Virus record (IMG/VR): IMGVR_UViG_3300008113_000003
Location: 62,001-126,000 of that record
DNA: 64,000 nucleotides
Reading direction: 5' to 3' (one strand)
How positions within the stretch are numbered: position 1 is the first letter of the stretch; each line of letters begins with the position of its first letter. Shown in pieces: positions 2,146 to 56,766 of this stretch. Position numbers and translations under genes: made by a program. The notes beneath the pieces were generated by a model. That model worked only from the letters and a program-made list of their open reading frames with translations, was not told the DNA's origin and made no database searches.

Positions 2146-2153
2146 TATTTATT
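2146..2153 (+). promoter_or_regulatory. TATTTATT putative phage late-promoter motif
   Basis: GACTATTTATT lies upstream of + strand gene 2201; the same motif recurs in gene orientation in many intergenic gaps. Confidence 0.55.
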
Positions 2154-2200
2154 ATTAACTGGAGATAATAAAACGACTTCACTAATAAATATATCAGATT

Positions 2201-2602
2201 ATGACAAAAAAAGTAAAATTCACAGAAAGACAAATAAAAATGCTTGCGGAAGTAGAGGCTCTTAAATTGAAGAACCCTGTTAATGAGGGGATTGAAGATA
2301 TGTTAGGAAAACATCTAGGTGATGATGAAGATAAAAAAATTGAGTATCCTTCACAAGAAGATTTAGCTGGTATGGATCCAGAGACTGAAATGGGCGGTGA
2401 CGACTCGATTAAAGTTACTGATATGAAGGGCGCTTCAGAGTTATTAGGTTATTTAGATAAACTAGAAGAAGCAAAATCCATCTTAAGTAAAATTGCCGCA
2501 AAGGAAGAGGATGATAACATCAAGGGTAGAATTTACGCACATTACGAAAAAACACAAAAACTAATCTTTGAACTAATCAAAGAATTTGGAATTGTTCACT
2601 AA
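2201..2602 (+). CDS. acidic hypothetical protein with N-terminal KKVKFTERQI tag (putative head/internal protein)
   Basis: 133-aa ORF flanked by a TATTTAT motif and a terminator; its N-terminus resembles MKVKITESQL of 9461..9799. Confidence 0.75.
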   Translation: MTKKVKFTERQIKMLAEVEALKLKNPVNEGIEDMLGKHLGDDEDKKIEYPSQEDLAGMDPETEMGGDDSIKVTDMKGASELLGYLDKLEEAKSILSKIAAKEEDDNIKGRIYAHYEKTQKLIFELIKEFGIVH

Positions 2603-2608
2603 AAACTT

Positions 2609-2635
2609 AAGGCCCTCTTGACTGAGGGCTTTTTT
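2609..2635 (+). terminator. intrinsic terminator
   Basis: AAGGCCCTC-TTGACT-GAGGGCTTT hairpin with a T-run just after the stop at 2602. Confidence 0.8.
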
Positions 2636-2659
2636 GTTTATTTTAGCTGTATTTTCCCT

Positions 2660-2668
2660 ATATTTATA
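2660..2668 (+). promoter_or_regulatory. ATATTTATA putative late-promoter motif
   Basis: Ends 2 nt before the GTG start at 2671. Confidence 0.55.
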
Positions 2669-2670
2669 GG

Positions 2671-3309
2671 GTGTCTAAACCATATAAAATATTATTGTAT
2701 AACAACGGTAAACGTATTAAGGTTATCGATCAGATTGCCACATATAATGAATCCGTTAAAGTTTACAACCAGATATTGGAATCAAACGTTTGTTTCTTTC
2801 CAAAAGAATATGATTGGTTAGGTAGAGAAACTGATTATGAATTGGTTTTAATTGGCCCAAAGACGGGTACTTCAATAAATCACTTTAGAAATGAAATGGG
2901 TGCACTTGTTAAAGTTAAACCAAAGGGTGATTTTGTTATAAAAAAAATTAGTCCCTACCCCATCGAAGAGGTGTTTAAACATAAGAACACCGATCAAAAA
3001 CACACATTTAGAACTTTAGTTAAAAATTTCCTGGTAAATAATAATAACACAAGAGTTGTACTGTCTTTTAACAACAAACTTGTTATTGAGTACTTTGAAA
3101 ACGAGCAGCTTGACGTATTTGTTCTTAAAAACCAAGAAGACTCGTTAAGGTTAAATGAAACCATTAAAGTTTTTACCCAAACAAATGGGTTGACAAACTT
3201 TATATTTTTTAATGATCCAACAATTGATACGGTGAGAAGGGTTTATGATGCTTTAGAGGCTAATTACGGGATTTCCAGAGAATGGATGGCCAGAACATCA
3301 ACAAGATGA
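2671..3309 (+). CDS. hypothetical protein (212 aa, GTG start)
   Basis: Long + strand ORF that abuts the convergent gene at 3310. Confidence 0.75.
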   Translation: MSKPYKILLYNNGKRIKVIDQIATYNESVKVYNQILESNVCFFPKEYDWLGRETDYELVLIGPKTGTSINHFRNEMGALVKVKPKGDFVIKKISPYPIEEVFKHKNTDQKHTFRTLVKNFLVNNNNTRVVLSFNNKLVIEYFENEQLDVFVLKNQEDSLRLNETIKVFTQTNGLTNFIFFNDPTIDTVRRVYDALEANYGISREWMARTSTR

Positions 3310-3525
3310 TTAGCTTCTTTTAAAGATAAACCTGACATCATTTATTATGATCTCAAAAGTTCTTTTAGAAGTGTAACCGTGCACTGTTTTATTTATAAAT
3401 TTAAAAACTTCCTGTTGTAAAACTTCATGCTTACTTTCATTTAGTTTAATATAAACTTCAGTATTTTTGTTTTCACCACTACTTGTGATTGTTGTTGCGA
3501 TATTATTTATCTGCTCTAGTTTCAT
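3310..3525 (-). CDS. hypothetical protein (71 aa)
   Basis: ATGA overlap with the upstream ORF, consistent with translational coupling. Confidence 0.65.
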   Translation of the reverse strand: MKLEQINNIATTITSSGENKNTEVYIKLNESKHEVLQQEVFKFINKTVHGYTSKRTFEIIINDVRFIFKRS

Positions 3526-3728
3526 AAATATCTAAATACCTTTGAGATAAAATTTTTAAACCTAGCCCATTTAGATGGCTCCTTTTTAATATAGTTATCA
3601 AAATTATTGATTTCTTTACCCAAACCTTTTTTTACGGCATCGGCATAAGCTTTTTTAGCTTTCTCAATTTCAAATTTATCTTTATTTATCTCCTTTTCAA
3701 AAGTTTTATAAAGTCTATCGTCTTCCAT
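3522..3728 (-). CDS. hypothetical protein (68 aa, basic amphipathic C-terminus)
   Basis: Tightly packed in the operon; ends in KWARFKNFISKVFRYL. Confidence 0.65.
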   Translation of the reverse strand: MEDDRLYKTFEKEINKDKFEIEKAKKAYADAVKKGLGKEINNFDNYIKKEPSKWARFKNFISKVFRYL

Positions 3729-3729
3729 A

Positions 3730-4335
3730 TTATTTTTTTAAATAAATAGTAAAATCTTCGTTTTCTAAATAACCCTGTACTAATTTTGGTATTGCGATAT
3801 GCGATAATCGATTTACCATATTCTCTGGATTATATAGGTTTAAAGGTGATAACCCAGATCTTTCATCTAAGAAATTAAACGCCACGCCTTTATTACACAT
3901 ATTATAGGCCATCTCAATCTTTCTAATAACCTCATCCATACCCACAAACCAGGTAAATACGCCTGATCCAATTACATAGTCAAACTTTTCGTTTATCTTA
4001 TCAATGTCAGAACATATGAATTTTTTTGTCGGGTACAACTGATTAGCGTAAACGATATATTTGTGGTTAATATCGATACCTGTGTAATCTATATTATTAT
4101 GGTTGTTATTGGCTATGTAATCGTTTAAATGGCCCAACCCACAGCCATAATCAAGTAAAGATGAGTTATCTTCTATACCAATACCAAATAAGGTCTTAAA
4201 TCGCTTCCTTTGCGTTTCTTGGTCTGTCCAACCAACAGCCATTGGTGTTGTAATTGGGTAGTCTTCAAGGTACATATTGTACACGCCAATAATATCACTG
4301 CTCATCTGGTAACTTTGATTCAATATATAATTCAA
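3730..4335 (-). CDS. class I SAM-dependent methyltransferase (true start possibly 4305)
   Basis: Motif I LLDYGCGLG, YTGIDIN, FDYVIGSGVF and an N-terminal GW...Q..RF. Confidence 0.85.
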   Translation of the reverse strand: MNYILNQSYQMSSDIIGVYNMYLEDYPITTPMAVGWTDQETQRKRFKTLFGIGIEDNSSLLDYGCGLGHLNDYIANNNHNNIDYTGIDINHKYIVYANQLYPTKKFICSDIDKINEKFDYVIGSGVFTWFVGMDEVIRKIEMAYNMCNKGVAFNFLDERSGLSPLNLYNPENMVNRLSHIAIPKLVQGYLENEDFTIYLKK

Positions 4336-5847: not shown

Positions 5848-6321
5848 TCAATAATTGTTTAAAAAATACTTATCAAGTGTTTTGTAGACTTCAAAAAAAA
5901 GGTCGTGTTCAGATTTTGTTTTGGTTATCTCGATCGACATTACATCATCCCAAAAATTAATGATTTTACTAAATAACCCCTTTGTTTTGGTGCTATTACC
6001 ATAATAGATGTCCATAAAATAAGCCAAGAAGTAATAATAGTGCTCACCCTTTTCTTGAAAGAAAATGTTTTCTTTCTTAAAATTATCCAAATTTCTTTTC
6101 CAGCACCAGTTAAAATGATTTACTTGATCGTCCTGATAAAGAATCACGTCATCACCAAGGTAAGTATCTTCAATTATATAAGTTAATGAAATGGAGAAGT
6201 CTCTAAATAATTCAACCTTTTCAGTTGTAATATTATTTATCGTGTTTAAATAGGCTAACTGTTCAAAACTTAACGGTTTTGAAAAATATTCTAAAAACTT
6301 ATGTATGTGTCCCCTACTCAT
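5848..6321 (-). CDS. hypothetical protein (157 aa)
   Basis: Aromatic-rich globular-looking ORF preceded by TATTTAT motifs. Confidence 0.75.
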   Translation of the reverse strand: MSRGHIHKFLEYFSKPLSFEQLAYLNTINNITTEKVELFRDFSISLTYIIEDTYLGDDVILYQDDQVNHFNWCWKRNLDNFKKENIFFQEKGEHYYYFLAYFMDIYYGNSTKTKGLFSKIINFWDDVMSIEITKTKSEHDLFFEVYKTLDKYFLNNY

Positions 6322-6328: not shown

Positions 6329-6368
6329 AATAAATAAGGGCCTCATGTTGATGAAGCCCTTATAAATA
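6329..6368 (-). terminator. hairpin terminator flanked by two TATTTAT motifs
   Basis: Minus strand ATAAGGGCTTCAT-CAAC-ATGAGGCCCTTAT (6363-6334), a 13-bp stem with one G-U pair, followed by TTATT; it lies downstream of 6402..9461. Confidence 0.65.
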
Positions 6369-6401: not shown

Positions 6402-9400
6402 TTACAATAATTTCTTCTTGCTAACGCTTTTCCAGAAAACATCGTTTTCATTGATTTGCTTAGCTTTTTTCTCTTCAGAAATAACCGCTTGGTCATAAGA
6501 AACCATTTTCATCATTTTTTGTATCTCTAATGAAACAACATCTTCGTTTACCTTTTTATCTTTTTTCTTTTTATTATCATCACCTGGCAATGCATCACTT
6601 CTTTCATATGAATCATCGTTGTTGATGTTAAGACCTTTAGATGTATAATCCATGTCTCTTACATCTCTTCTAGCTTTAACAGCTTGCATTAGTTTTTCAC
6701 CACCCTTAGAGTCGTAATCAACATTTGCCTCACCTTCTTTATCAGGTAAACCGTTTGCTTGCGCAACAATTCTATCTTTAAAGTCATCACCACTGTCATT
6801 AACATAATCAAGATCTAACATGCTATTTCTACCGTGTTGTTTAACATCGATACTATCTTCCCAATCACTGTTATTGTGTTTTTGGTTTTTTAAGTTATCA
6901 ACTTTTTGATCAACGGTTTTTTGAGTTTTTTCAGCAGCTTTGATCATTTCCTCAGCTTCTTTTTCATTTTTAGCGTTTTCAGAATCTACATTCTTACCTT
7001 TCTTGGCAACAAATTTAGCCAATTCAGCTTCCTCTAAAAAATCTTCGTCATCATTGTCAACGTCAAAATTACCCATTTTTTCAATGTTTTTCAAATCTTT
7101 CATTGATGGTTCTTTTTCATCAGAAAAATCATCATCTTCAGTATCTTTGTATTTGCTATCTTGTTTTTCACCATAAGCTCTAATGAACTCAGCTTTTTTC
7201 ATAGCTCTAGGTTGTAACTCGTCAACTGTATCCAAAGCATCGGTTAAATTATCATCCATAAGTAAACCTGTTTTTTCTAAGAAAGATCTTTTGGTTGGTG
7301 ATACTAATAGATTTAATATGCTATTATTAGAACCTTTTGCGAATAATCTATCGCAATACTCCAAATAACTTTCCTCAGGGGTTTTTTGTATGAAATTAAT
7401 AAAGTTATCAGCGTTAGCATCTCTACTTGATTCGAATTGACTAAAATACTGATTAAATTTATCTTTAATATCGTCTGTATTTAACCCTTTAGCTAATGTA
7501 GCCATAGATTTTTCGATCGAGTTCATGAAATTTGTAAAGTATTTCATTTCTCTTTCGTATTGATCGCTTACAGCAACCTCATCGTCTTCAACGTCAGCTT
7601 CATCATTATATTCCATAAGCTCATCAGCTGGGCCTTCTACACCGATAGGGCCGACTGGTGCCATGCTAACTGGAGCTGGTGTCATATCACCTTCTGGTGC
7701 ATTTTCACCTTCCATTTCATTCATCAAGAAATCAAATACATGACTTAAATTTTCTTTTGCAACAGCCATGTGATCAGCAGCCCAATCATGTCCACTATTT
7801 AAAATAGCTTCAATTTTACCGTGATCAAATTTCATTAAGACATCAGCTTGTCTTTTGATTTGCTCTAAATTAGAGAAGAACATGTATCTGCTACTATCCT
7901 CATCACCTTCCGATAAATCAAATTCGTTCATCCAACCACCTTCTTCTAAATCAGCACCATCTCTTTCACCTTTACCAAATTTCTTTTTAGCCTCATTCCA
8001 GTCTTCCATTGAAAGATCCCAACCGTCAACCGCTTTAGCAACGTGTTCTTTAGCTTCAGAATAAGAATGACCGTGCTCAACACAATGTTTCAACTGGTCA
8101 TAAATAGCAGGGTTAATTCCAGCAGCCTCATCAACTTCACCTTCGCCAAACATATCCATTCCCATACCTTCATCCTCTAACATAGCTTCCGCTGTGTTTT
8201 TAGCTTCTTCGATGGCTTCTTGGTAATCACCATTTTCTAAATATTCTTCAATAGTATCTAAACCATTTGCAAATGTGGCTGTATCAGCAAGATCAGATGT
8301 ACCCATACCTGGTAACATTCTACTAATAAACATGTTAACCAACTTAACACCTGTTTCTCTAGCACCAATTCTTTCAACACTTGCCTCAATTTTTGCGTAT
8401 TTGTTAGCAAAACCACTAGCTGGTTCTTCTTCCTCTAACGCATCATTTTCTTCGTAAACCATTTCCTCTGGATCTAAACCTCTTCTAAAAGCGTCTTCAT
8501 AAAGTTTTTCTTGGGATTCCATTTTACCACCCCAAAGTTCTGAAATATAGCTAGAAACTTCGTTTGCACAAGAAGAGCCTTCACTCATCATGCAAGATTT
8601 AACCATTTCCATGCATATTTCAGCATCTTCCATCATTGATTTACAATAGCCTTCATATGTCTCACCTTCATTTAATGTTTCAGGTAAAAACCCTTCTCTA
8701 ACTAAAGTTTCGTACATGCATTCTGCAAGTTGATTATTTTCCATAATACCGCCCATGCACTTTGATGCGAATTCGGGTGTTAATTGTATGTTTTCCATAG
8801 TATTTGTATTTTCTAAGTTTTTATTTTCTTCTGTATAATTTTCATCCAACAATTCGATGGATTCATTTAATTGTTCAATAACAGATTCATTGATATTTTC
8901 CATTTTAATCATATCAATTGTTTCTGATAAATATTTTTCTCTGATTAATTTTGCTATAAATTCTGGTGACTTACCAGTTTCTTCAGCAATATGAGAGCAA
9001 TACCCATAACACCCCTCGCACATTTCTTCTTTAGACTCACCGATAAGTTTGATGGGTTTATCTACAGCTCCTTGTGAGCAATATGGGAATGCAAGGCATT
9101 TAGGTTCGATGGCCACTAAATGACCACCATTGTAAGAAGGCTTTTGCTTTAAATCACCACCAAACCATTCTAATAAATCACCTTCGGTTACTAAATTACC
9201 TTCAGTGCTATATAAATGTTCTTTAACATAACCTTGTGGTGGTACAGCTATTCTACCCACACCAACACCATTTTTAACATTGGAATCTTTCCATGTGTTA
9301 AAAAGCCTACTGTTTAATTTTTTCTTTGATATTCTACCTAACGGACCGATAAACCCACCATATGTTGGGCTACCTGGGTCACCTAAAACAGAAGCGACAG

Positions 9401-9461
9401 AAGCTGATTCGTTAACCAACGTTTTTTCAACAATGTTTTTTAAAAAATCCTCTTTTTTCAT
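6402..9461 (-). CDS. large acidic modular protein (1019 aa), putative head-associated/internal protein
   Basis: Very rich in E, D and M; many L/I/V-x-E sites separate short modules (CLAFPYCSQG; YMFFSNLEQ...HDWAADH). Confidence 0.8.
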   Translation of the reverse strand: MKKEDFLKNIVEKTLVNESASVASVLGDPGSPTYGGFIGPLGRISKKKLNSRLFNTWKDSNVKNGVGVGRIAVPPQGYVKEHLYSTEGNLVTEGDLLEWFGGDLKQKPSYNGGHLVAIEPKCLAFPYCSQGAVDKPIKLIGESKEEMCEGCYGYCSHIAEETGKSPEFIAKLIREKYLSETIDMIKMENINESVIEQLNESIELLDENYTEENKNLENTNTMENIQLTPEFASKCMGGIMENNQLAECMYETLVREGFLPETLNEGETYEGYCKSMMEDAEICMEMVKSCMMSEGSSCANEVSSYISELWGGKMESQEKLYEDAFRRGLDPEEMVYEENDALEEEEPASGFANKYAKIEASVERIGARETGVKLVNMFISRMLPGMGTSDLADTATFANGLDTIEEYLENGDYQEAIEEAKNTAEAMLEDEGMGMDMFGEGEVDEAAGINPAIYDQLKHCVEHGHSYSEAKEHVAKAVDGWDLSMEDWNEAKKKFGKGERDGADLEEGGWMNEFDLSEGDEDSSRYMFFSNLEQIKRQADVLMKFDHGKIEAILNSGHDWAADHMAVAKENLSHVFDFLMNEMEGENAPEGDMTPAPVSMAPVGPIGVEGPADELMEYNDEADVEDDEVAVSDQYEREMKYFTNFMNSIEKSMATLAKGLNTDDIKDKFNQYFSQFESSRDANADNFINFIQKTPEESYLEYCDRLFAKGSNNSILNLLVSPTKRSFLEKTGLLMDDNLTDALDTVDELQPRAMKKAEFIRAYGEKQDSKYKDTEDDDFSDEKEPSMKDLKNIEKMGNFDVDNDDEDFLEEAELAKFVAKKGKNVDSENAKNEKEAEEMIKAAEKTQKTVDQKVDNLKNQKHNNSDWEDSIDVKQHGRNSMLDLDYVNDSGDDFKDRIVAQANGLPDKEGEANVDYDSKGGEKLMQAVKARRDVRDMDYTSKGLNINNDDSYERSDALPGDDNKKKKDKKVNEDVVSLEIQKMMKMVSYDQAVISEEKKAKQINENDVFWKSVSKKKLL

Positions 9462-9799
9462 TAATTAGGTGAATTTTTAAGGTCACTTACCCAGAAACTT
9501 CTTCTGGTCCATAACTGTTTATATAGCTGAACCAACACATTTCTCGTTATTTCAACCACTTTATTTTCAAAATCTTTATTACTTTTAACGGTATCTTTTA
9601 CGATATCTTTTACCTTAGTTTCAAACTGAGAGCCACGTGTAATGTTTAAGAAATCCTTTATTTCATTCTTAATCAAAACTTTAATGTCGCTCTTATCCGT
9701 TGGGGTAAGGGCTTCATTTATTGGTGTTTTATCATCCATTTCAACCAAACATTCTTTCAAATACTGGTCTAATTGGCTTTCGGTTATTTTAACTTTCAT
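9461..9799 (-). CDS. hypothetical protein with MKVKITESQL tag (putative head protein)
   Basis: TAATG-coupled to the 1019-aa gene and preceded by TATTTATA. Confidence 0.75.
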   Translation of the reverse strand: MKVKITESQLDQYLKECLVEMDDKTPINEALTPTDKSDIKVLIKNEIKDFLNITRGSQFETKVKDIVKDTVKSNKDFENKVVEITRNVLVQLYKQLWTRRSFWVSDLKNSPN

Positions 9800-9814: not shown

Positions 9815-9822
9815 TATAAATA
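9815..9822 (-). promoter_or_regulatory. TATTTATA putative late-promoter motif
   Basis: GACTATTTATA ends 15 nt upstream of the ATG at 9799. Confidence 0.6.
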
Positions 9823-9840
9823 GTCTTTAAATCGGAAATG

Positions 9841-14496: not shown

Positions 14497-14505
14497 TATA
14501 AATAT
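14497..14505 (-). promoter_or_regulatory. ATATTTATA putative late-promoter motif
   Basis: Ends 3 nt before the ATG at 14493 and heads the 14493-to-9841 operon. Confidence 0.6.
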
Positions 14506-14522
14506 TTAGTTTTTAATTAAAA

Positions 14523-15329
14523 TTACAATAAATTAAAGATTCCCCCAGAATAGAACCTAAGTTTTTTAATAGCTTTTTCCTTAATTTGCCTAACACGTTC
14601 TTTGGTTAACTCCAAATCCTCAGATATTTCTTGAAGGGTGCATTCATTACCATCTAAACCAAAATATCTAACAATAACAAGCTTTTCAGTCTCCGTTAAG
14701 TTATTTAAAACGTTATTTAAAGCGTTAATTAGATTTACCCTGTCGCTGTCATAAGCTTCGTCTGGTCTTGGTGATGATTTATCTTCATAAATATCGTACA
14801 ATGATAATCCCTCGTCATCATATTTATCATCAAGCCTTTCAACGGATGGTAAATTTGAGAACCCGTTAATGACATCGTTTTCAGTCATTGAAGCGAAATT
14901 CTTTTGTGCTTCTTTGTTAGCTTTACGAACATCATTAATTACGTTAATTGGTAATCTGATCATTCTTGAATTATCGTGCAATGACTGGATAATTGACTGT
15001 TTAATCCACCAAACGGCATAGGATAGGAATCTAACCTCTTCCTGTTCGTAATTAAACCTTTCAGCCGCTTTTAATAGACCAAGATTACCCTCAGATATTA
15101 AATCCTCAAAATTCAAACCTTGACCCTGGTATTGTTTCGCTACGGTAATGACATATCTAAGGTTTGAATAAATAAGCTTTTCTTTTGCTTTACTATCCCC
15201 AGTTTTAATTTGTTTGAGCAACTCACGCTCCTCAAGTCGGCTAAGTGGCTCATGTTTTCTTACGTCTTGTAAGTAATTTGCGATCTCTCTTTGATCGATC
15301 CAGTGTGATGTGTCAATTCTCTGTGTCAT
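14523..15329 (-). CDS. phage-encoded sigma70 factor (RpoD/RpoS family, lacks region 1.1)
   Basis: Region 1.2 YLQDVRKHEPLS; region 2 NLRYVITVAKQY...DLISEGNLGLLKAAERF...RFLSYAVWWIKQSI; region 4 TLQEIS..LELTKERVRQIKEKAIKKLR. Confidence 0.92.
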   Translation of the reverse strand: MTQRIDTSHWIDQREIANYLQDVRKHEPLSRLEERELLKQIKTGDSKAKEKLIYSNLRYVITVAKQYQGQGLNFEDLISEGNLGLLKAAERFNYEQEEVRFLSYAVWWIKQSIIQSLHDNSRMIRLPINVINDVRKANKEAQKNFASMTENDVINGFSNLPSVERLDDKYDDEGLSLYDIYEDKSSPRPDEAYDSDRVNLINALNNVLNNLTETEKLVIVRYFGLDGNECTLQEISEDLELTKERVRQIKEKAIKKLRFYSGGIFNLL

Positions 15330-21222: not shown

Positions 21223-21254
21223 CAAAGATAAGAAATTATTTCATTACAAACAAA
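21223..21254 (-). promoter_or_regulatory. Bacteroidota-type promoter TTTG-N20-TATCTTTG for the primase-to-sigma operon
   Basis: TTTG at 21254-21251, 20-nt spacer, TATCTTTG at 21230-21223. Confidence 0.75.
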
Positions 21255-24052: not shown

Positions 24053-24061
24053 AATAAATAT
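24053..24061 (-). promoter_or_regulatory. ATATTTATT putative late-promoter motif
   Basis: Located in the 90-bp gap upstream of the start at 23992. Confidence 0.5.
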
Positions 24062-24083
24062 ATGGTTATTTTGTTTTTTCATT

Positions 24084-28868: not shown

Positions 28869-28878
28869 TATAAATATC
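28869..28878 (-). promoter_or_regulatory. GATATTTATA putative late-promoter motif
   Basis: Ends 12 nt upstream of the ATG at 28856. Confidence 0.6.
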
Positions 28879-37800: not shown

Positions 37801-37802
37801 AT

Positions 37803-44625: not shown

Positions 44626-46440
44626 TTAATTAATTCCTGTTGCAATAACTGGTATAACTTTTATATCAGTATCACCATTTCTAATGTTTAGCATTTGATA
44701 TTCATCAACAATTATGTAATTGCCTGTTATATCTATTTCACCAGTTGCGGAATCAATTAATGATTGGCTTGTTGTGTTTGTTGAATAACCAACTCCAGTT
44801 TTATTAAATGCTTTAATATAATTAACGTTTAAAACACCATCAACTTGCGTAATCTTTTTGATCATCTCACCAACACTGTAACTCTTACCTAATTGTTTTT
44901 TCTCATCCAAAAATTCGTTTTCAACAATTGTGGTTATATTTGATACCGCTGATATTTGTTGACCGTTTTCAACCAAAACACCAATTTCAAAACCTAAATC
45001 AATGATTTCAGCTGGTTTAACAACCACATAATCGTTTATCATTCTAAACTTGGATAAATAAGCGGCTATGTTTTCCATCAATAAAGATGTCACCGTGTTT
45101 GATATATCACCATTAGCGTCATAAGACAAGACACCTATTTCAATTTTATTTTGTTTTTGTGTTATACTGGTTTTTGCTGGGGTACCAAATTTACTTGGCA
45201 TACTTAATAGTAGGACTTTGTAGTCATTTAACGTTACAGCCCTATTTTGTGCAGCAAAATTATAACCAATATAGTTCCTTAACTCCTCAACCGTTGGTTC
45301 GTCAGAACCCCCGACAGCTGGTGTTGTATTTGTAACCGTTATTGATGATTGTACGGTTGAATTAATTGCTGTATCTGGGCCGTTTATAGTCGATGTTAAT
45401 CTGTTAATAGTTGTTATTGTACCAGGGCCAGTATTTGTTCCAACACCGCCACCAATTCTATATCTAACAAATATTGTTGTGTTAGCTATTGGTGCCATAC
45501 CAAGGCTACCATTTCTTAAAAAACTTTTAAGGTCAAAAGTACCCCCATCTAGGAAATCGTCTAGAATATCAAAAGATGAATCCGTTTGGGCACCAAAGGT
45601 TATTGTACAAAAACCTTTTGGGGTAAACTCGGTAATGTATCTTTTATCTATTTTTTGGTAAATACCTTTTGCGATACCACTTACTCTAGGTGAATTTATG
45701 TCTTCAACAAAAACACTATCTTCAGCTAATGAAGGTACTTCATACCACTTATTTGGACTACTGATAAATTCGCTATCGGTTGGTGTCGCTGTAAAAGTCG
45801 TACCAGCTTTATGGATTACAGACTCAACAGATAAAACGTTGTTTTCTGGTAAAGTTATTTTGTAGAAAGGTATTGAGTTTACAAACGTTTGGTTATAAAC
45901 TTTTGTCGTACCAGCTATAACAATACCAGTTTTTGTAATTGAGTAAGCTGTTATCTTGTTGTTAACAAAAATAGGTCTCTTTGTTCTATCAACGTTACCA
46001 GAACTATTTGTGGCTAAATTAAAATCAACATCATACACCAATTCATATGTATTTTCGCCATTTGAAACTTGTGTACCAGCTTTAATAACTGGTAAGTATC
46101 TTATATCCTCTTGATCTCCGTAAACAGGTACTTGAGCTGTAAACTCAACAACCGCAACAGCTGAAGATTTTGTGGGTAATTTAAGACCATATGTCTTAGC
46201 AATATTATATAACGATTGTCGTTCTTGTGCGTAATCTAAAACAGTTTCTTGCAACGCCCTATCGATTTGATAGTTTAAGTTATCAGCAATAGCCGCATTT
46301 AAATCTAAGAATACTGATAGTATTGACGCATCGTTAAAGCTTTGTACAACCTCTGGGTAATACTGTTTGATATAGTTTATTTGCTCCGTTTTTAAAGAAG
46401 CAAAATCTCTTTTACTATAATTTATTTGTCTGTTTGCCAT
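44626..46440 (-). CDS. baseplate wedge subunit (T4 gp6 / P2 gpJ-like)
   Basis: YSKRDFASLK, LDYAQERQSLYNIAKTYG, IKAGT, YRIGGG..TN, GGSDEPTVEELR and QNRAVTLNDY. Confidence 0.9.
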   Translation of the reverse strand: MANRQINYSKRDFASLKTEQINYIKQYYPEVVQSFNDASILSVFLDLNAAIADNLNYQIDRALQETVLDYAQERQSLYNIAKTYGLKLPTKSSAVAVVEFTAQVPVYGDQEDIRYLPVIKAGTQVSNGENTYELVYDVDFNLATNSSGNVDRTKRPIFVNNKITAYSITKTGIVIAGTTKVYNQTFVNSIPFYKITLPENNVLSVESVIHKAGTTFTATPTDSEFISSPNKWYEVPSLAEDSVFVEDINSPRVSGIAKGIYQKIDKRYITEFTPKGFCTITFGAQTDSSFDILDDFLDGGTFDLKSFLRNGSLGMAPIANTTIFVRYRIGGGVGTNTGPGTITTINRLTSTINGPDTAINSTVQSSITVTNTTPAVGGSDEPTVEELRNYIGYNFAAQNRAVTLNDYKVLLLSMPSKFGTPAKTSITQKQNKIEIGVLSYDANGDISNTVTSLLMENIAAYLSKFRMINDYVVVKPAEIIDLGFEIGVLVENGQQISAVSNITTIVENEFLDEKKQLGKSYSVGEMIKKITQVDGVLNVNYIKAFNKTGVGYSTNTTSQSLIDSATGEIDITGNYIIVDEYQMLNIRNGDTDIKVIPVIATGIN

Positions 46441-46441: not shown

Positions 46442-46858
46442 TTATACTGTTATTGATAATTTATCGCTCGTTGAGAATGTTTTGGAGCTTATTGTGTAAT
46501 CTAAGTTTATTCTGATTTGGTGTTCCTTTTCGGTATCATTTAAAAATTCAGGCTCATTCCCAACATTTGTAATGTTAATTGCATTTAATTTTAAATTTGG
46601 TATGTATTTTTCAACCGCATCCTGAATCTCATTTTCTATTTTACCTAATGTTGTTTCATCAAGCGGTTCAAAGATATATTGATACAAGTTAGTCCCAAAG
46701 TCTGGTAAGTAATACCTAGATCCCTTTCTTGTTAAAAGAAGGTGTATTAACATTGATTTCACCTCAGCTTCTGGTATTGTCGTTAAACCAACATAATCAC
46801 CGCTACTTGATTCCGTAAAAGGGAAATCAATACCAAATGTTTGTTTTTTAATTGCCAT
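46442..46858 (-). CDS. baseplate wedge subunit (T4 gp25 / P2 gpW-like)
   Basis: GIDFPF, LIHLLLTRKGSRYYLPDFGTNL...IFEP and AVEKYIP. Confidence 0.92.
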   Translation of the reverse strand: MAIKKQTFGIDFPFTESSSGDYVGLTTIPEAEVKSMLIHLLLTRKGSRYYLPDFGTNLYQYIFEPLDETTLGKIENEIQDAVEKYIPNLKLNAINITNVGNEPEFLNDTEKEHQIRINLDYTISSKTFSTSDKLSITV

Positions 46859-46865: not shown

Positions 46866-46879
46866 TATAAATAAATATC
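46866..46879 (-). promoter_or_regulatory. overlapping GATATTTATT/TATTTATA putative late promoter heading the baseplate operon
   Basis: Minus strand CGATATTTATTTATAAAAGAAT-ATG, directly downstream of the nrdA terminator. Confidence 0.65.
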
Positions 46880-46902
46880 GTAATAATTTATTTTTTGTAA
46901 AT

Positions 46903-46933
46903 AAAAAAAAATCCCGCCAATGTGACGGGATTT
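46903..46933 (-). terminator. intrinsic terminator after nrdA
   Basis: Minus strand AAATCCCGTCA-CAT-TGGCGGGATTT with a poly-T run. Confidence 0.85.
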
Positions 46934-49395: not shown

Positions 49396-50346
49396 TTAAA
49401 AATCGTCAGTAAAGCTAAGTTTCTCGTTAAGTTTAGCTTTCTGATACTCTACGGTTCTTGATTCAAAAAAGTTCCCTTTTGTCTCCACGGCAATTTGTTC
49501 CATGAATTTAAAAGGTTGTTCAACATTAAATTCTTTTTTGCACCCAAATTTAGTCAACAAACCATCTGTGACAAACTCTAAATATTGTTTCATTAGATTT
49601 GAGTTCATACCAATAAGTGACACTGGTAATGACTCTGTGATAAATTCTTTTTCGATATCCAAAGCAGATAATAAAATCTCTCTGATTCTAGATTCTGAAG
49701 GTTTATTCTCAACGTGGTTGTTGATTAAATGAATTGCGAAATCACAATGCAAGTTTTCATCTTTAAAGATAAGTGTGTTTGCGTTGCATAACCCCTGCAT
49801 CAAACCTCTGGATTTTAACCAAAAGATTGAACAGAATGATCCTGAGAAGAAAATACCCTCTACAGCAGCAAACGCAACTAGTCTTTCTTGAAAAGAAGCG
49901 TTTTCAATCCAATCCAAAGCCCATTTAGCTTTTCTTTGTACGGCTGGTAAATGTTCCAATGCCCTGAAACTTTCTAGTTTTTCTTGTGCGTTTGATATGT
50001 AGGTATCAATCAACAAAGAATACATAAGGCTGTGGATGTTTTCCATTGCTATTTGCATGCCATAAAAAAACTTGGCTTCTGGATATTGGACTTCCTTTAA
50101 AAAATTCTCGGCAAGGTTTTCATTAACAATACCGTCCGATGAAGCAAAGAACGATAAAATGTTTTTAATGAAATACTTCTCGTTATCCGTTAGATTTTGC
50201 CAATCCCTGATATCGTTAGATAAATCGACTTCTTCGGCTGTCCAAAACGCAGCCTGGTGTTGTTTGTAAAACTCCCAAATGTCGTTGTGTTCGATGGGGA
50301 AAATAACAAATCTGTTTGGATTTTCCTGTAAAATTTTTTCTTGCAT
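49396..50346 (-). CDS. nrdB: class Ia ribonucleotide reductase beta subunit (start corrected to ATG at 50346)
   Basis: [39 protein letters not shown] (Tyr radical), [15 protein letters not shown] and NFFE. The track's extension to 50400 overlaps promoter motifs. Confidence 0.97.
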
Positions 50347-50377
50347 AATTCTTATTAATCTTAATTTTTCTTGTTTA

Positions 50378-50397
50378 AATAAATATGGGCAAAGATA
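50378..50397 (-). promoter_or_regulatory. tandem host-type TATCTTTG (-7 box) and TATTTATT motifs upstream of nrdB
   Basis: TATCTTTG at 50397-50390 and TATTTATT at 50385-50378; no clear -33 TTTG. Confidence 0.55.
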
Positions 50398-54413: not shown

Positions 54414-54425
54414 AAGCTTTATTTT

Positions 54426-55382
54426 TTAGAATGGTAAATCGTCAATCTTTAGTTGAGCGTTTGGTACCTCTTCAGTCGCTGACCCTTCCGTCATAGACGA
54501 ATCATCATCAGCATCTTCTTCAGACATAGCAACTGGTGCTGGTGTCTCGTATTTAGTTTTAGGGGCTGGTGTTGCGGTTCCAGTGTATGTGCTTACACCA
54601 TCCTCAACTTTGGCGATAAAACATTTTTGTTCGGCATCCCAAATTGGTTCGCTACCTTCAGCAACGATGTTTAAATATTCAATAGATTTTTTCTTGAAGA
54701 CATCAGTCCACGCCATTGGATCGCTTAACCACTCAACTGATTGGTTTTCGTCCTCAGACAATTTAGACTCTCTATCAGGGATGATAGATGCAACTTTAGT
54801 AAAACCAACTTTGCTATCTTTTGATTTATCTCTAATCATAGAGATTGTAAGATCGAAACCTTCAAATGGGTTCCAGAATGCACCGTATTTTTTAACAAGT
54901 GGTGCAATTTTGTCCATGATACCTGAACCGTCTTGTACTGCTGGAAATCTCCAGAATTTTACACCTTCATGTTCTTTACCACGTTCGATAACACGAACAA
55001 TGAAGAACTGGCGTGATTTGTAATTGATGGCCAATTTCTTGTCTTCTTTGTCTGCACTCTTCATTAAGAATTTGTACATCTCATTCAACGGAGAATCTTC
55101 ACCATCTTGTGATGGGTCATAAAGTTTTGTCCATCTTTTACCAATTTTTAGGTTGTGGAAATAACCAACTTTGTACCATTTAGTTGGGTCATCTTGGTTA
55201 GGAAGAATCCTAACTGATTTTTCACCACTTTGTGCACCTTCATCAAGTGCAATTGTGAAATACTTTGTTAAGTCGACAGAACTAGATTGGGTAGTCTGTG
55301 TTGTTTTCGACTTTGCTTTTTCGTAGTCGGCCAGAGTGTCTGTTGCGGCCTTGGACCAATCGATTTTCTTGTAGTCAATCAT
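54426..55382 (-). CDS. single-stranded DNA-binding protein (T4 gp32-like)
   Basis: VRILP, YFH, VIERGKEHEGVKFWRF, GFDLTI and an acidic tail ending DDLPF. Confidence 0.85.
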   Translation of the reverse strand: MIDYKKIDWSKAATDTLADYEKAKSKTTQTTQSSSVDLTKYFTIALDEGAQSGEKSVRILPNQDDPTKWYKVGYFHNLKIGKRWTKLYDPSQDGEDSPLNEMYKFLMKSADKEDKKLAINYKSRQFFIVRVIERGKEHEGVKFWRFPAVQDGSGIMDKIAPLVKKYGAFWNPFEGFDLTISMIRDKSKDSKVGFTKVASIIPDRESKLSEDENQSVEWLSDPMAWTDVFKKKSIEYLNIVAEGSEPIWDAEQKCFIAKVEDGVSTYTGTATPAPKTKYETPAPVAMSEEDADDDSSMTEGSATEEVPNAQLKIDDLPF

Positions 55383-55403
55383 AATTATATAAATTTTATG
55401 CTA

Positions 55404-55435
55404 CAAAAGTAAGAACAAAAACCACAAAAAACAAG
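55404..55435 (-). promoter_or_regulatory. Bacteroidota-type promoter CTTG-N20-TACTTTTG heading the replication operon
   Basis: TACTTTTG at 55411-55404, 20-nt spacer, CTTG at 55435-55432. Confidence 0.7.
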
Positions 55436-55460
55436 TTTCTGGGGAAATATTTTTAAAAAT

Positions 55461-55766
55461 TTAGAAAATCGACTTGTACTTCTTAACCCCAAATACCAAT
55501 AAACCTCTGTAAACGCTTGTTGTTTCGTTTTGACTAGCGTTAACAGCTGTAACCTCTATAGATTGTATTGGCATTTCTAACATGCCCATCATTGAGAACG
55601 TTATGTCTTCAACACCGTTAATGGTTGTAACTACGGTATCATTTGTATTACCCAATGTTATAAAACCGTAATACTCTATTGTATAATCAGTTTCATTTAC
55701 AAAACCAATTGCTGGGTCACCAACAGTTAATTTTTGCGTAATTAATTCTTGTTGTATATGTCTCAT
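55461..55766 (-). CDS. hypothetical beta-rich protein (101 aa), possibly a virion component
   Basis: Last gene of a TATTTAT-headed three-gene unit. Confidence 0.7.
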   Translation of the reverse strand: MRHIQQELITQKLTVGDPAIGFVNETDYTIEYYGFITLGNTNDTVVTTINGVEDITFSMMGMLEMPIQSIEVTAVNASQNETTSVYRGLLVFGVKKYKSIF

Positions 55767-55768
55767 TA

Positions 55769-56518
55769 TTAATAATTGCTTACAGGTTTTTCGTTATTAT
55801 TTGCGTTGTAAAAACTATTTCTAATGTCAGTTTCGTTGTAGTTATTCATAAGACTGTCCATCATAGATAGTTTGTCTGGTCTATTTTCAAGATCAGTTTG
55901 TGTTTTTGGTGCGTTTCCACCCATATACTCATCTTGAGTAACACTAAAAGGGTAAGAATCTTTAGCCAAAGCTTTTCTTCTTTCCTCTTCGGTTGGCGGT
56001 CTCATCAATTCAACTTGTTTTGTTAAAGCATTCATTTGTTGAATAACTGAGTCCATTTTTTGTAAACCTTGCTCAACACCATTAACTTTAGCAATGATGG
56101 ATTCGATTTTGTTACTAGCATCCGCAATTTTTTGGATAATGTTGTCTGTTTTACCAGACAAATCTTTACTAGTATTAACTAAATCAGTAACATCAATTTC
56201 GGTATCACCCTCAACTGGAGCCTCTGGAGCCACCTCTGGGGTAGCTGTGGTATCAACACCAGGATCTGCACCTAATTCAGCATCTGGAACGGCAGTATCC
56301 ACACCAGGATCTGTAGCAGGTGCCTCAGCACCTAATTCAGCATCTGGAACGGCAGTATCCACACCAGGATCTTCGGCTGGAACTTCTTCAGCTGGGGCAT
56401 CTTCCTCAGCTTCATAAAACTTATAATGATGACCCTCACCCAATTTTTCTTGGTAGGCCATAATACTATTAAATCTTTTTACCTCTTCGGATAATACTTT
56501 ATCTAATTTTTTGTTCAT
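55769..56518 (-). CDS. acidic P/A-rich coiled-coil protein with LSEEVKRFNSIM tag (scaffold/internal head protein candidate)
   Basis: Terminal tag, acidic repeats, TEIDVTDLV, coiled coil and DSYPF. Confidence 0.75.
   Translation of the reverse strand: MNKKLDKVLSEEVKRFNSIMAYQEKLGEGHHYKFYEAEEDAPAEEVPAEDPGVDTAVPDAELGAEAPATDPGVDTAVPDAELGADPGVDTTATPEVAPEAPVEGDTEIDVTDLVNTSKDLSGKTDNIIQKIADASNKIESIIAKVNGVEQGLQKMDSVIQQMNALTKQVELMRPPTEEERRKALAKDSYPFSVTQDEYMGGNAPKTQTDLENRPDKLSMMDSLMNNYNETDIRNSFYNANNNEKPVSNY
56268..56372. repeat. 45-bp exact direct repeat (period 60) encoding DPGVDTAVPDAELGA x2, plus a partial third copy
   Basis: Copies at 56268-56312 and 56328-56372; a partial DPGVDT copy lies at about 56249-56267. 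Confidence 0.9.
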
Positions 56519-56742
56519 CTTAAATATGTTTTACGACTGTGACTTATTGGTGATTCTTCTCTTAGTAATTCTCTACCATCTTCCATCATTAATTTCTTTT
56601 CAATCAATGTTCTTTCAATTAAACCGTCTTTTGTTTTTACATAACAAACCCCAGTTTTTATATCACAAACTTCTTCACCGATTTGTGCTTCTTCAATTTT
56701 TTTACCCAAAAATTGGTCTAATTTACTATTAAAATTGCTCAT
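56515..56742 (-). CDS. hypothetical protein (75 aa) with CDIKTGVC motif
   Basis: ATGA-coupled; VCDIKTGVCY...DGLIER...EDGRELL. Confidence 0.7.
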   Translation of the reverse strand: MSNFNSKLDQFLGKKIEEAQIGEEVCDIKTGVCYVKTKDGLIERTLIEKKLMMEDGRELLREESPISHSRKTYLR

Positions 56743-56756
56743 ACGCTTTTATTTAC

Positions 56757-56766
56757 TATAAATATC
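56757..56766 (-). promoter_or_regulatory. GATATTTATA putative late-promoter motif
   Basis: Ends 14 nt upstream of the ATG at 56742. Confidence 0.6.

What the first reader, a model, noticed from the sequence alone, without database searches (positions are those of the whole stretch)
2146..56766. Orientation-locked TATTTAT(A/T) motif heads the structural operons and is the reverse complement of the T4 late promoter
Seen: TATTTAT(A/T) lies 2-60 nt upstream of start codons at 2146 and 2661 (+ strand genes) and at 6329/6361, 9815, 14497, 24053, 28869, 46866/46870, 50378 and 56757 (- strand genes). It flips when gene direction flips, so it is read as TATTTAT rather than T4-type TATAAATA. It often sits just after a terminator (2635, 46903). 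Replication operons instead carry host-type promoters. Inference: a phage-specific late promoter class with no obvious -35 element.
Basis: partly seen in the sequence, partly recalled or inferred. Interest (0 to 1): 0.65.

Follow-up and report, generated by a model that had tools for sequence, protein, structure and literature searches.

The report
Conserved phage late-promoter motif TATTTAT
A short AT-only word, (G/A)(A/C)TATTTAT(A/T), sits in gene orientation just upstream of tail, baseplate and packaging genes of this uncultivated large phage and its relatives. It is most likely a phage-specific late promoter read by a distant relative of the T4 late sigma factor gp55, that is, a variant of a known strategy in a poorly studied phage group.

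Summary
Every listed copy is present on the stated strand. The window's total count of TATTTATW is at chance (32 against 34.5 expected), but 11 of 32 copies lie in the 2.3% of the window that is non-coding (p=6e-11). Upstream copies read with the gene. Copies inside genes show no orientation bias.

In an unbiased search, ATATTTAT/TATTTATA are the top oriented upstream 8-mers genome-wide (23 sense, 1-2 antisense). Among all 7-mers, TATTTAT is the best conserved upstream of orthologous genes in two relatives (19 of 21; next best 8; composition-matched shuffles at most 3). The same word tops the list in Flavobacterium phage immuto and Microcystis phage Mel-JY01.

It heads genes for tail tube, sheath, gp25-like baseplate, terminase and fibre, and also nrdB. 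No -35 element is conserved. A conserved A lies 4-5 nt downstream, and several start codons sit exactly there, which suggests leaderless mRNAs.

A 237-aa gp55-like sigma co-occurs with the motif in all five genomes that carry it. Primase and DNA polymerase genes carry Bacteroidota-type promoters (TTTG/TAnnTTTG).

"Reverse complement of T4" is formally true, but the motif also matches TATAAATA at 6 of 8 positions read directly. Sites 2661 and 6361 are not conserved. No transcription start was mapped. I rate it a new variant of a known kind, of moderate interest.

The parts
2144..2153 (+). Motif site ACTATTTATT, about 47 nt before the ATG of gene 2201-2602 (+). One half of a divergent promoter pair.
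   Evidence: The word is kept at -54 to -60 in both relatives G1 and G2.
2184..2193 (-). Motif site (TA)TATTTATT heading gene 1770-2126 (-).
   Evidence: Kept at -64 to -66 in G1 and G2.
3741..3750 (-). Motif site ACTATTTATT, 12 nt before the ATG of gene 3522-3728 (-). It overlaps the 3' end of the upstream ORF.
   Evidence: Kept at -20/-21 in G1 and G2.
6329..6336 (-). Motif site TATTTATT, 7 nt before the ATG of gene 5848-6321 (-). It directly abuts the hairpin at 6337-6360, so it may also serve as that hairpin's T-rich tail.
   Evidence: The word and the hairpin are both kept in G1 and G2, the hairpin with compensatory changes.
6337..6360 (-). Conserved stem-loop (terminator-like) between genes 6402-9461 and 5848-6321.
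   Evidence: The stem co-varies in G1 and G2.
9815..9824 (-). Motif site ACTATTTATA, 15 nt before the ATG of gene 9461-9799 (-).
   Evidence: Kept in G1 (-24) and G2 (-19).
14497..14506 (-). Motif site AATATTTATA, 3 nt before the ATG of gene 14200-14493 (-). The geometry is leaderless. It lies directly after the sigma70-like gene.
   Evidence: A TATTTAT is also present upstream of the weak G2 orthologue.
14523..15329 (-). Phage sigma70-family factor, 268 aa, RpoS/RpoD-like, with regions 1.2, 2 and 4. It is a rival candidate reader of the motif.
   Evidence: Pfam Sigma70_r2 at 59 bits and Sigma70_r4 at 53 bits. phrog_351. NCBIfam. Absent from immuto and Mel-JY01.
24053..24062 (-). Motif site (TA)TATTTATT, about 60 nt before the ATG of gene 23747-23992 (-).
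   Evidence: Kept at -68 in G1 and -44 in G2.
28869..28878 (-). Motif site GATATTTATA, an exact match to the consensus, 12 nt before the ATG of the 910-aa gene 26124-28856 (-).
   Evidence: Kept at -20 in G1 and G2 while the flanks diverge.
46870..46879 (-). Motif site GATATTTATT, 11 nt before the ATG of the gp25-like baseplate wedge gene. The overlapping copy at 46866 is the same site read 4 nt out of register.
   Evidence: gene identities. The site is kept upstream of the orthologue in about 45 related viral contigs whose neighbouring gp6-like protein is 62-100% identical.
46903..46929 (-). Intrinsic-terminator-like hairpin plus T run that closes the upstream operon, just before the gp25 promoter.
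   Evidence: The stem sequence differs among relatives but its pairing is kept.
46442..46858 (-). gp25-like baseplate wedge gene, first gene of the baseplate operon.
   Evidence: phrog_261 and phrog_43.
44626..46440 (-). gp6-like baseplate wedge gene.
   Evidence: phrog_6 and phrog_219.
50378..50387 (-). Motif site (CA)TATTTATT, about 35 nt before the probable true ATG (50343) of the ribonucleotide reductase small-subunit gene. A host-type -7 box, TATCTTTG, lies 3 nt upstream, so the two promoter types are in tandem.
   Evidence: Both elements are kept in G1 and G2. phrog_86.
56757..56766 (-). Motif site GATATTTATA (exact), 14 nt before the ATG of gene 56515-56742 (-).
   Evidence: Kept at -20 to -22 in G1 and G2.
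2661..2668 (+). TATTTATA copy after the terminator at 2611-2635. Not conserved, and probably not a member of the class. It may be the -7 box of a host-type promoter (TTTG, 22 nt, TATATTTA).
   Evidence: Absent upstream of the orthologues in G1 and G2.
6361..6368 (-). TATTTATA copy on the upstream side of the hairpin at 6337-6360. Not conserved, probably chance.
21223..21254 (-). Bacteroidota host-type promoter (TTTG, spacer, TAnnTTTG) 8 nt before the DNA primase gene 20252-21214. This tightly packed operon runs on to the SbcC-like gene and the sigma70-like gene.
   Evidence: phrog_47. phrog_77 for 15932-18313.
1392..1423 (-). Host-type promoter before the 465-aa gene that ends the window's left edge (ATG at 1366).
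   Evidence: phrog_850.

Best explanation
The word (G/A)(A/C)TATTTAT(A/T), followed by WW and then AA, is most likely the sole sequence-specific element of a phage-specific promoter class. This class drives the late genes (virion structure and packaging) of this uncultivated phage of at least 206 kb, and of a wider group that includes Flavobacterium phage immuto and Microcystis phage Mel-JY01. The first set of promoters indicates a Bacteroidota host.

It would work like a -10-type element. Host core RNA polymerase carries a phage-encoded sigma, which reads the word on the non-template strand. Initiation would occur at the conserved A 4-5 nt downstream, so the word would span about -12 to -5. 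No -35 contact is involved.

The most likely sigma is the 237-aa gp55-like protein encoded at genome position 173619-174332, outside the window.

Leaders are very short (about 7-12 nt) or absent. That fits a host without Shine-Dalgarno pairing.

Early and replication genes use the host sigma-A through TTTG/TAnnTTTG promoters.

Shown: motif, placement, orientation, conservation, gene classes and the sigma fold. Inferred: promoter activity, start site, timing, and which sigma reads the motif. The confidence given (0.75) is for the promoter reading; for the assignment to the gp55-like sigma I would put about 0.55.
For: 1. Unbiased count. In oriented -60..-1 windows of 201 genes the top 8-mers are ATATTTAT (23 sense, 1 antisense, 1.3 expected), TATTTATA (23 and 2) and GATATTTA (15 and 0).

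2. The exact 10-mer GATATTTATA occurs 11 times in the genome. Each time an ORF's ATG follows on the same strand, 4-25 nt downstream. GATATTTAT occurs 17 times against 6.5 +/- 2.7 in shuffles.

3. Footprint across relatives. For 86 genes with orthologues in two relatives (their gp6-like proteins are 75% and 63% identical to this phage's), TATTTAT is kept upstream in all three genomes for 19 genes. The best of the 20 other same-composition permutations scores 3. The exact reverse complement scores 4. Among all 7-mers it ranks first, at 19 of 21 against 8 for the next. Positions are kept while flanks diverge.

4. The same word is the top, or near the top, oriented upstream 8-mer in G1 and G2, in immuto (21 sense, 6 antisense) and in Mel-JY01 (ATATTTAT 19 and 2). 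In Mel-JY01 it sits 30-45 nt upstream of leaders that carry GGAG-type ribosome sites. The word therefore stays while the translation signals change with the host.

5. Genes headed by it: tail tube, tail sheath, large terminase, gp25-like wedge and tail fibre, plus proteins of 2921, 919 and 910 aa with no family match. Primase, DNA polymerase and others carry TTTG/TAnnTTTG instead.

6. No column upstream of the word reaches 0.7 bit in 26 aligned sites. A is present at 0.81 and 0.87 at the 4th and 5th nt after the word in 63 sites from four genomes. Start codons placed 3-4 nt after the word recur in all four genomes. This matches the spacing of 4-5 nt between the -7 box and the start site in Flavobacterium johnsoniae (PMC6847099).

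7. Sigma. The 237-aa protein and its family match the T4 gp55 family phrog_234 (16 of 27 members, best E 2.9e-5) and Sigma70_r2 (14 of 27, best 1.5e-5). The best structural match of its model among 48,161 chains is T4 gp55 in the late transcription complex (7d7d_F: Z 10.6, rmsd 2.3 A over 96 residues). It is present in all five genomes that have the motif. In both this phage and immuto a motif copy directly follows the gene.

8. No phage RNA polymerase was detected.

9. In four river metatranscriptomes, contigs cover the tube and sheath ORFs separately and leave the motif-bearing spacers uncovered. This is consistent only.
Against: - No transcription start site, timing or binding data exist. 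The RNA evidence is assembled contigs at low depth, which cannot show 5' ends.
- The match to gp55 is weak at the sequence level: E 4.9e-4 to 6.5e-3 for this protein alone, hhalign E 0.065 and Foldseek E at least 0.13. Helical domains often reach middling Z scores.
- The protein has an extra C-terminal domain that T4 gp55 lacks.
- A 484-kb uncultured phage (LR756508) with a 27%-identical homologue shows no enrichment of the word in the 260 kb examined. The sigma family therefore does not always go with this word.
- No gp45-type clamp was found, but the record is only 69% complete.
- The word also precedes nrdB and small unknown genes, so 'late' is not strictly 'structural'.
- One site (6329) doubles as a terminator tail.
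Confidence: 0.75

Rival explanations
1. The word is a promoter element, but it is read by the phage's own sigma70-family factor (268 aa, window 14523-15329), not by the gp55-like protein.
For: This factor is a clear sigma with regions 2 and 4. It lies in a host-type-promoter operon with replication genes, so it would be made early or in the middle period. A motif copy lies directly after its stop codon. It is conserved in G1 and G2.
Against: It has no homologue in the complete immuto genome (no tblastn hit and no Sigma70_r2 match) or in Mel-JY01. Both of those genomes show the motif. A sigma with region 4 would be expected to leave a -35 footprint, and none is seen.
Confidence: 0.12
2. The word is a weak or variant host -7 box (TAnnTTTG family) read by host sigma-A, possibly helped by a phage activator. 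On this view there is no dedicated phage sigma.
For: The word sits where a -7 box would sit relative to the inferred start. It shares T-12, A-11, T-8 and T-6 with the host consensus. At 50378 and 2661 it lies next to, or overlaps, host-type elements.
Against: It differs at two of the six nearly invariant host positions: A where the host has T-7, and A or T where the host has G-5 (PMC6847099). It lacks the upstream TTTG that the phage's own host-type promoters show. It partitions cleanly from them by gene class. It is kept in a phage recorded on a cyanobacterial host, whose sigma-A has a different specificity.
Confidence: 0.1
3. The word is not a promoter. It could be an RNA-level signal (processing site, translation enhancer or terminator tail) or simply AT-rich spacer composition.
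For: The commonest spacing to the ATG is narrow, at 12-16 nt. One copy abuts a hairpin and could be its T tail. Spacers are AT-rich. The window's total count is at chance.
Against: - Spacing ranges from 3 to 68 nt and is kept gene by gene among relatives.
- In Mel-JY01 a separate ribosome site lies between the word and the ATG.
- Most genes inside operons lack the word.
- Composition-matched permutations are not conserved.
- Spacer GC is only 0.31 against 0.34 for the genome.
- Only about four of 26 sites follow a hairpin.
Confidence: 0.05

Closest known systems
Bacteriophage T4 late promoters (TATAAATA at -13 to -6), read by gp55 with gp33 and the sliding clamp gp45
   Same: - A single short AT-only -10-like octamer is the only conserved element, and there is no -35 (PMC1524935).
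- It heads virion and packaging genes.
- A phage-encoded protein with a sigma region-2 fold has T4 gp55 as its best structural match.
- The word is identical to the T4 word at 6 of 8 positions in the same orientation.
- The A at -12 and the A at -8, which gp55 flips into pockets (PMC7892883), have counterparts in the new word.
- In the weak profile alignment, the tyrosine that stacks on A-12 in gp55 aligns with an invariant tyrosine of the new family.
   Different: - The central AA is TT. The T4 word itself is depleted upstream (2 against 23).
- The inferred position is 1 nt closer to the start.
- The sigma is 237 aa and has an extra C-terminal helical domain with a faint sigma region-4 likeness (Z about 5).
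- Sequence similarity to gp55 is marginal.
- No gp45-type clamp was found in the 69%-complete record, and gp33 was not searched.
- The hosts are Bacteroidota, and by one record a cyanobacterium, not Enterobacteria.
Bacteroidota housekeeping promoters (sigma-A of the B. fragilis type): -33 TTTG and -7 TAnnTTTG
   Same: The position relative to the inferred start is the same (4-5 nt spacer). TA at the 5' end and T at -8 and -6 are shared (PMC6847099). The phage uses genuine promoters of this type for primase, DNA polymerase and other genes, some of them 4 nt before the ATG.
   Different: Two nearly invariant positions differ (T-7 and G-5). There is no TTTG upstream. The gene class is different. 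The word is kept in a relative recorded on a host from another phylum.
Late promoters of jumbo phages with their own multisubunit RNA polymerases (phiKZ, AR9)
   Same: Short AT-rich late promoter words without a -35 element in very large phage genomes. The AR9 non-virion polymerase's promoter-recognition subunit is among the structural matches of the sigma model (7s01_A, Z 8.1).
   Different: No beta, beta-prime or single-subunit RNA polymerase genes were detected here. The word is different. Host-type promoters are present, so the host polymerase is used.

Membership tests
T4-type late transcription system (gp55-dependent late promoters) | The only conserved element is a short AT-only -10-like word; there is no -35 element. 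| tested here: met
   In 26 aligned sites no upstream column exceeds 0.6 bit. The 63-site logo from four genomes agrees.
T4-type late transcription system (gp55-dependent late promoters) | Consensus word TATAAATA in gene orientation. | tested here: not met
   The word is TATTTATA, identical at 6 of 8 positions. TATAAATA occurs in sense orientation upstream only 2 times against 23, and 4 against 22 with ATG-only gene calls.
T4-type late transcription system (gp55-dependent late promoters) | The word lies at -13 to -6 from a mapped transcription start. | not testable with these tools
   No 5'-end data are available. The RNA runs are held as contigs only. The position of about -12 to -5 is inferred from the conserved A and the leaderless start codons.
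T4-type late transcription system (gp55-dependent late promoters) | A phage-encoded gp55-family sigma (region-2-like domain). | tested here: met
   phrog_234 is hit by 16 of 27 family members (best E 2.9e-5), and by this protein alone at E 4.9e-4 to 6.5e-3. Sigma70_r2 is hit by 14 of 27. The top structural match is gp55, 7d7d_F, at Z 10.6. The sequence signal is weak, and the protein has an extra C-terminal domain.
T4-type late transcription system (gp55-dependent late promoters) | Co-activator gp33 and sliding clamp gp45 as activator. | tested here: inconclusive
   phrog_223 (gp45) has no match in the record, which CheckV rates 69% complete. gp33 was not searched.
T4-type late transcription system (gp55-dependent late promoters) | Drives virion and packaging genes late in infection. 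| tested here: inconclusive
   The gene class fits: tube, sheath, wedge, terminase and fibre. It also precedes nrdB. Timing cannot be tested here.
Bacteroidota sigma-A promoter (-33 TTTG / -7 TAnnTTTG) | A -7 box with nearly invariant T-12, A-11, T-8, T-7, T-6 and G-5. | tested here: not met
   The motif has A at the T-7 position and A or T at the G-5 position (compared with PMC6847099).
Bacteroidota sigma-A promoter (-33 TTTG / -7 TAnnTTTG) | An upstream TTTG at about -33. | tested here: not met
   Not conserved at motif sites. It is present at the phage's own host-type promoters.
Intrinsic terminator T tract | A GC-rich hairpin immediately 5' of the T-rich word. | tested here: not met
   True only for 6329. 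Terminators at 46903-46929 and elsewhere lie 20-30 nt upstream and have their own T runs.
Translation initiation signal (Shine-Dalgarno or Kozak-like) | A fixed short distance to the start codon, upstream of most genes. | tested here: not met
   Spacers range from 3 to 68 nt. The word is absent before most genes within operons. In Mel-JY01 a separate GGAG site follows it.

The most novel reading that the evidence does not exclude
The TATTTAT word and the 237-aa gp55-like sigma could form a self-contained late-transcription module that does not depend on host phylum. It would be shared by a large and almost unstudied clade of big myophages, which has thousands of metagenomic homologues and cultured members on Flavobacterium and, by record, Microcystis. 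On this reading it is a second, anciently diverged branch of the T4 gp55 system, with a changed base specificity (central TT instead of AA), an added C-terminal domain that may replace gp33 and the clamp, and direct production of leaderless late mRNAs in hosts that lack Shine-Dalgarno pairing.
Probability: 0.4. Interest if true: 0.65.

Novelty: new variant of a known kind. Interest (0 to 1): 0.5.

Why it matters
- **Annotation.** It gives a concrete, testable promoter-and-sigma pair for a widespread group of large freshwater and marine phages, for which no transcription signals have been described in the papers I could search. Operon heads and late genes can now be annotated in these genomes, where most proteins have no family match.

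- **Sigma specificity.** It offers a natural specificity variant of the T4 late system, TAT-TT-ATA against TAT-AA-ATA. This could show how the pockets of a minimal sigma domain choose bases.

- **Engineering.** It is a candidate orthogonal promoter-sigma pair for Bacteroidota engineering.

- **Translation.** The start codons placed exactly at the inferred start site suggest regular use of leaderless mRNAs by these phages.

Tried and rejected
- **Near-identity search** of 8 kb of the window against deposited phage genomes found nothing.
- **My first iterated weight matrix** drifted into generic AT-rich sequence (175 hits) and was dropped in favour of exact-word and conservation tests.
- **An 'ORF follows within 45 nt' test** had a useless background of 17%, because internal ATGs counted. 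It was replaced by called gene starts and orthologue footprints.
- **The built-in 'read backwards' control** of the pattern search is uninformative here, because ATATTTATA reads the same backwards.
- **Sequence searches of the gp55-like protein** and of its family profile against solved structures found nothing. Foldseek gave no hit at E of 0.001 or better, although sigma factors filled the list. Only the exhaustive structural alignment placed gp55 first.
- **Profile comparison of the gp55-like family with the window's sigma70-like protein** showed no relation.
- **A -35-like TTTACA** lies 18-19 nt upstream of the gp25 site and is conserved among relatives, but it is not general to the class.
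- **Metatranscriptome contigs** could not give 5' ends.
- **PHROG and Pfam scans** gave no family for many genes headed by the motif.
- **Literature searches** for the motif, for late promoters of Flavobacterium phages, for immuto and for Mel-JY01 found no description of this promoter. The library lacks most subscription journals, so this is weak evidence of novelty.
- **The prediction that every genome with a homologue of the sigma has the word** failed for LR756508.

Full report
**What the window is.** The window is bases 62001-126000 of a single 206,296-bp viral contig with 33.6% GC. IMG/VR classes it as linear, and CheckV rates it 69% complete. It is about 94% coding and most genes are on the minus strand. 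No near-identical deposited phage exists. The closest cultured relatives are very distant: their gp6-like baseplate proteins are 25-27% identical. They are Flavobacterium phage vB_FspM_immuto and Microcystis phage Mel-JY01. IMG/VR holds 56 related loci whose gp6-like protein is 55-100% identical. In the window I could name the following:
- a gp25-like wedge gene (46442-46858) and a gp6-like wedge gene (44626-46440);
- a 2389-aa protein with an M23 peptidase domain, tape-measure-like (56820-63989);
- an SbcC-like gene (15932-18313) and a DNA primase (20252-21214);
- a ribonucleotide reductase small subunit (49396-50343);
- a sigma70-family factor (14523-15329).

**Checking the observation.** The total count of TATTTATW is ordinary, 32 against 34.5 +/- 5.8 in shuffles, so the word is not enriched as such. 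Its placement is another matter. Eleven of 32 copies fall in the 2.25% of the window that is non-coding (p=6e-11). Three more sit at the ends of over-called ORFs, directly before real starts. The 18 copies inside genes are split 8 sense to 10 antisense. The upstream copies all read with their gene. Genome-wide, 41 of 91 copies lie in the 5.9% of sequence that is intergenic, although spacer GC (0.31) hardly differs from the genome's (0.34).

**Unbiased motif search.** I counted all 8-mers in the oriented -60..-1 windows of 201 called genes. The top words are ATATTTAT (23 sense, 1 antisense, 1.3 expected), TATTTATA (23 and 2) and GATATTTA (15 and 0). The exact 10-mer GATATTTATA occurs 11 times in the genome, and each time an ORF's ATG follows on the same strand 4-25 nt downstream. 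GATATTTAT occurs 17 times against 6.5 +/- 2.7 in shuffles. The T-ending variant alone has a high antisense background (9 sense, 12 antisense), because A-rich leaders contain AATAAATA. A logo of 63 sites from four genomes reads (G/A)(A/C)TATTTATA, two W, then A at 0.63, 0.81 and 0.87.

**Conservation, with control for AT content.** I took two long related contigs, G1 (154 kb) and G2 (141 kb), whose gp6-like proteins are 75% and 63% identical to this phage's.
- In each, TATTTATA is again the most enriched oriented upstream 8-mer.
- For 86 genes whose N-termini align in both relatives, TATTTAT is present upstream in 23 and kept in all three genomes in 19.
- The best of the 20 other permutations of the same letters is kept 3 times.
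- The best word of the complementary composition is kept 6 times, and the exact reverse complement ATAAATA 4 times.
- Among all 7-mers TATTTAT ranks first, at 19 of 21 against 8 for the next.
- Positions relative to the ATG are kept gene by gene, including the long leaders of the tail tube and sheath genes (motif at about -44). The flanks diverge.
- Upstream of the gp25-like gene, about 45 related contigs keep a hairpin whose stem sequence changes but still pairs, then the motif, then the ATG.

In the window the conserved sites are 2146(+), 2184(-), 3741(-), 6329(-), 9815(-), 14497(-), 24053(-), 28869(-), 46870(-), 50378(-) and 56757(-). Sites 2661(+) and 6361(-) are not conserved.

**Which genes carry it.** Motif-headed genes include the tail tube, the tail sheath, the large terminase, the gp25-like wedge (first gene of the baseplate operon) and a collagen-like tail fibre. 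They also include giant ORFs of 2921, 919 and 910 aa with no family match. A second promoter class is equally clear. TTTG, a spacer of 17-22 nt and TAnnTTTG form the Bacteroidota housekeeping promoter (PMC6847099). It precedes the primase operon, which runs on to the SbcC-like and sigma70-like genes. It also precedes the DNA polymerase gene, a metallophosphoesterase, a glycosyltransferase and others. The split is not absolute. The nrdB gene at 50378 has a host -7 box followed 3 nt later by the motif, and both are conserved in the two relatives.

**Anatomy and likely mechanism.**
- No -35-like column is conserved in 26 aligned sites.
- The conserved A's lie 4-5 nt after the word.
- In all four genomes some start codons lie 3-4 nt after the word, so their A falls on those conserved positions. 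Examples are the 2921-aa gene and window gene 14200-14493.
- The phage's host-type promoters show the same habit: TAnnTTTG, 4 nt, then ATG. In Flavobacterium johnsoniae the -7 box ends at -5, with 4-5 nt to the start site.

I infer that transcription starts at that A, that the word spans about -12 to -5, and that leaders are absent or about 7-12 nt long in most cases. This fits a host that does not use Shine-Dalgarno pairing. None of this is measured.

**Relation to the T4 word.** TATTTATA is indeed the reverse complement of TATAAATA. Because the T4 word is nearly self-complementary, the new word is also identical to it at 6 of 8 positions in the same orientation. It differs only in the central AA, which is TT here. 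T4 gp55 flips A-12, A-9 and A-8 into pockets (PMC7892883). The first and third have counterparts in the new word and the second does not. The motif is better described as a two-base variant of the T4 late promoter than as its mirror image.

**Who reads it.** Two sigma-like genes exist.

1. *The 268-aa factor* (window 14523-15329). It is a clear RpoS/RpoD-like sigma with regions 2 and 4.

2. *The 237-aa protein* (genome 173619-174332, outside the window).
   - It gives weak hits to the T4 gp55 family and to Sigma70_r2.
   - Its family has 4056 detected homologues.
   - Of 27 diverse members, 16 hit the gp55 family (best E 2.9e-5) and 14 hit Sigma70_r2 (best 1.5e-5).
   - An AlphaFold model (pLDDT 75.5) finds T4 gp55 as its best match among 48,161 chains: 7d7d_F, Z 10.6, rmsd 2.3 A over 96 residues. 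The region-2 domains of many sigmas follow. Chain F is gp55.
   - The C-terminal half resembles region 4 only faintly (Z about 5).

Comparative presence favours the second protein. It is found in all five genomes that show the motif: this one, G1, G2, immuto and Mel-JY01. The sigma70-like factor is missing from the complete immuto and Mel-JY01 genomes. In both this phage and immuto a motif copy directly follows the gp55-like gene. No phage RNA polymerase was detected. The assignment remains an inference. A 484-kb uncultured phage with a 27%-identical homologue shows no enrichment of the word in 260 kb. That result also shows my k-mer procedure does not return this word by default.

**Cross-host evidence.** In immuto the word is among the top oriented upstream 8-mers (21 sense, 6 antisense) and has the same flanks. 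In Mel-JY01, ATATTTAT (19 and 2) and TATTTATA (13 and 1) head the list. There the word lies 30-45 nt upstream, and a GGAG-type ribosome site sits between it and the ATG. The word is thus retained while the leader adapts to the host's translation. This argues against a translational role and against recognition by host sigma-A.

**RNA data.** Twenty river metatranscriptome runs hold parts of the tail tube and sheath region. In four of them, contigs cover the tube ORF and the sheath ORF separately. They leave the two motif-bearing spacers without cover. This is consistent with separate transcripts that begin near the motif, but contigs at depth 3-9 cannot show 5' ends.

**Comparison with known systems, and verdict.** The system works like T4 late transcription, and I file it as a variant rather than a member. 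The word differs. The sigma is only distantly related and carries an extra domain. A gp45-type clamp was not found in the incomplete record, and gp33 was not searched. It is not a Bacteroidota housekeeping promoter, because two nearly invariant positions and the upstream TTTG are missing. I found no description of this promoter in the searchable literature. The finding is real and well supported by comparative evidence. It is mechanistically unsurprising for a large myophage and of moderate interest.

Noticed in passing
window 14523-15329 (-): A full sigma70-family factor (RpoS/RpoD-like, with regions 1.2, 2 and 4) is encoded at the end of the primase and SbcC operon. It is conserved in G1 and G2 but absent from immuto and Mel-JY01. 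Its promoter class is unknown. It could define a third (middle) class, for which I did not find a motif.
   Followed up: partly
genome 9799-10299, 13232-13717, 30228-30626 (loci L001, L002); window 20252-21214 and 1366: Several host-type promoters place TAnnTTTG exactly 4-5 nt before the ATG, so early mRNAs also look leaderless. In the host model F. johnsoniae, 87% of the transcripts with a probable promoter have leaders longer than 10 nt (PMC6847099).
   Followed up: partly
window 50373-50397 (-): Tandem arrangement upstream of nrdB: a host-type -7 box, TATCTTTG, followed 3 nt later by the TATTTAT word, both conserved in two relatives. This suggests expression in both the early and late periods.
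   Followed up: partly
window 46880-46905 (-): Upstream of the gp25 site, a TTTACAA word 18-19 nt before TATTTAT is conserved in all relatives, including the most divergent group. It looks like a -35 hexamer but is not shared by the other sites.
   Followed up: partly
window 28893-36911 (-), 6402-9461 (-), 26124-28856 (-); genome 129326-138091 (-): Giant ORFs of 2672, 1019, 910 and 2921 aa have no PHROG match at all. Two of them are headed by the motif, so they are probably virion proteins.
   Followed up: no
window 56820-63989 (-): A 2389-aa protein has an M23 metallopeptidase domain near residues 2030-2280. It resembles tape-measure or tail-lysin proteins.
   Followed up: no
locus L086:4000-9900 (genome 144000-149900): Twenty independent river metatranscriptome studies (2018-2019, one from 2025) hold tail tube and sheath sequence of this phage or close kin at 99% or more identity. 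The phage appears to be common and active in rivers.
   Followed up: partly
Flavobacterium phage immuto, whole genome (L089-L097): A second strongly oriented upstream word in immuto, TCAATAATTAAAA (ATAATTAA: 22 sense, 0 antisense), and a third, ATATTTAG (18 and 1), suggest further promoter classes in that phage. They are not prominent in this genome.
   Followed up: no
genome about 32800-42400 (loci L002, L003): Long spacers with tRNA-like sequence (for example the T-arm consensus GGTTCGAATCC) indicate a tRNA gene cluster outside the window. I did not scan it.
   Followed up: no
genome 171720-173619 (L007:5720-7619): Two glycosyltransferase-like genes lie directly upstream of the gp55-like sigma gene. 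Immuto also has sugar-modifying genes in the same neighbourhood.
   Followed up: no
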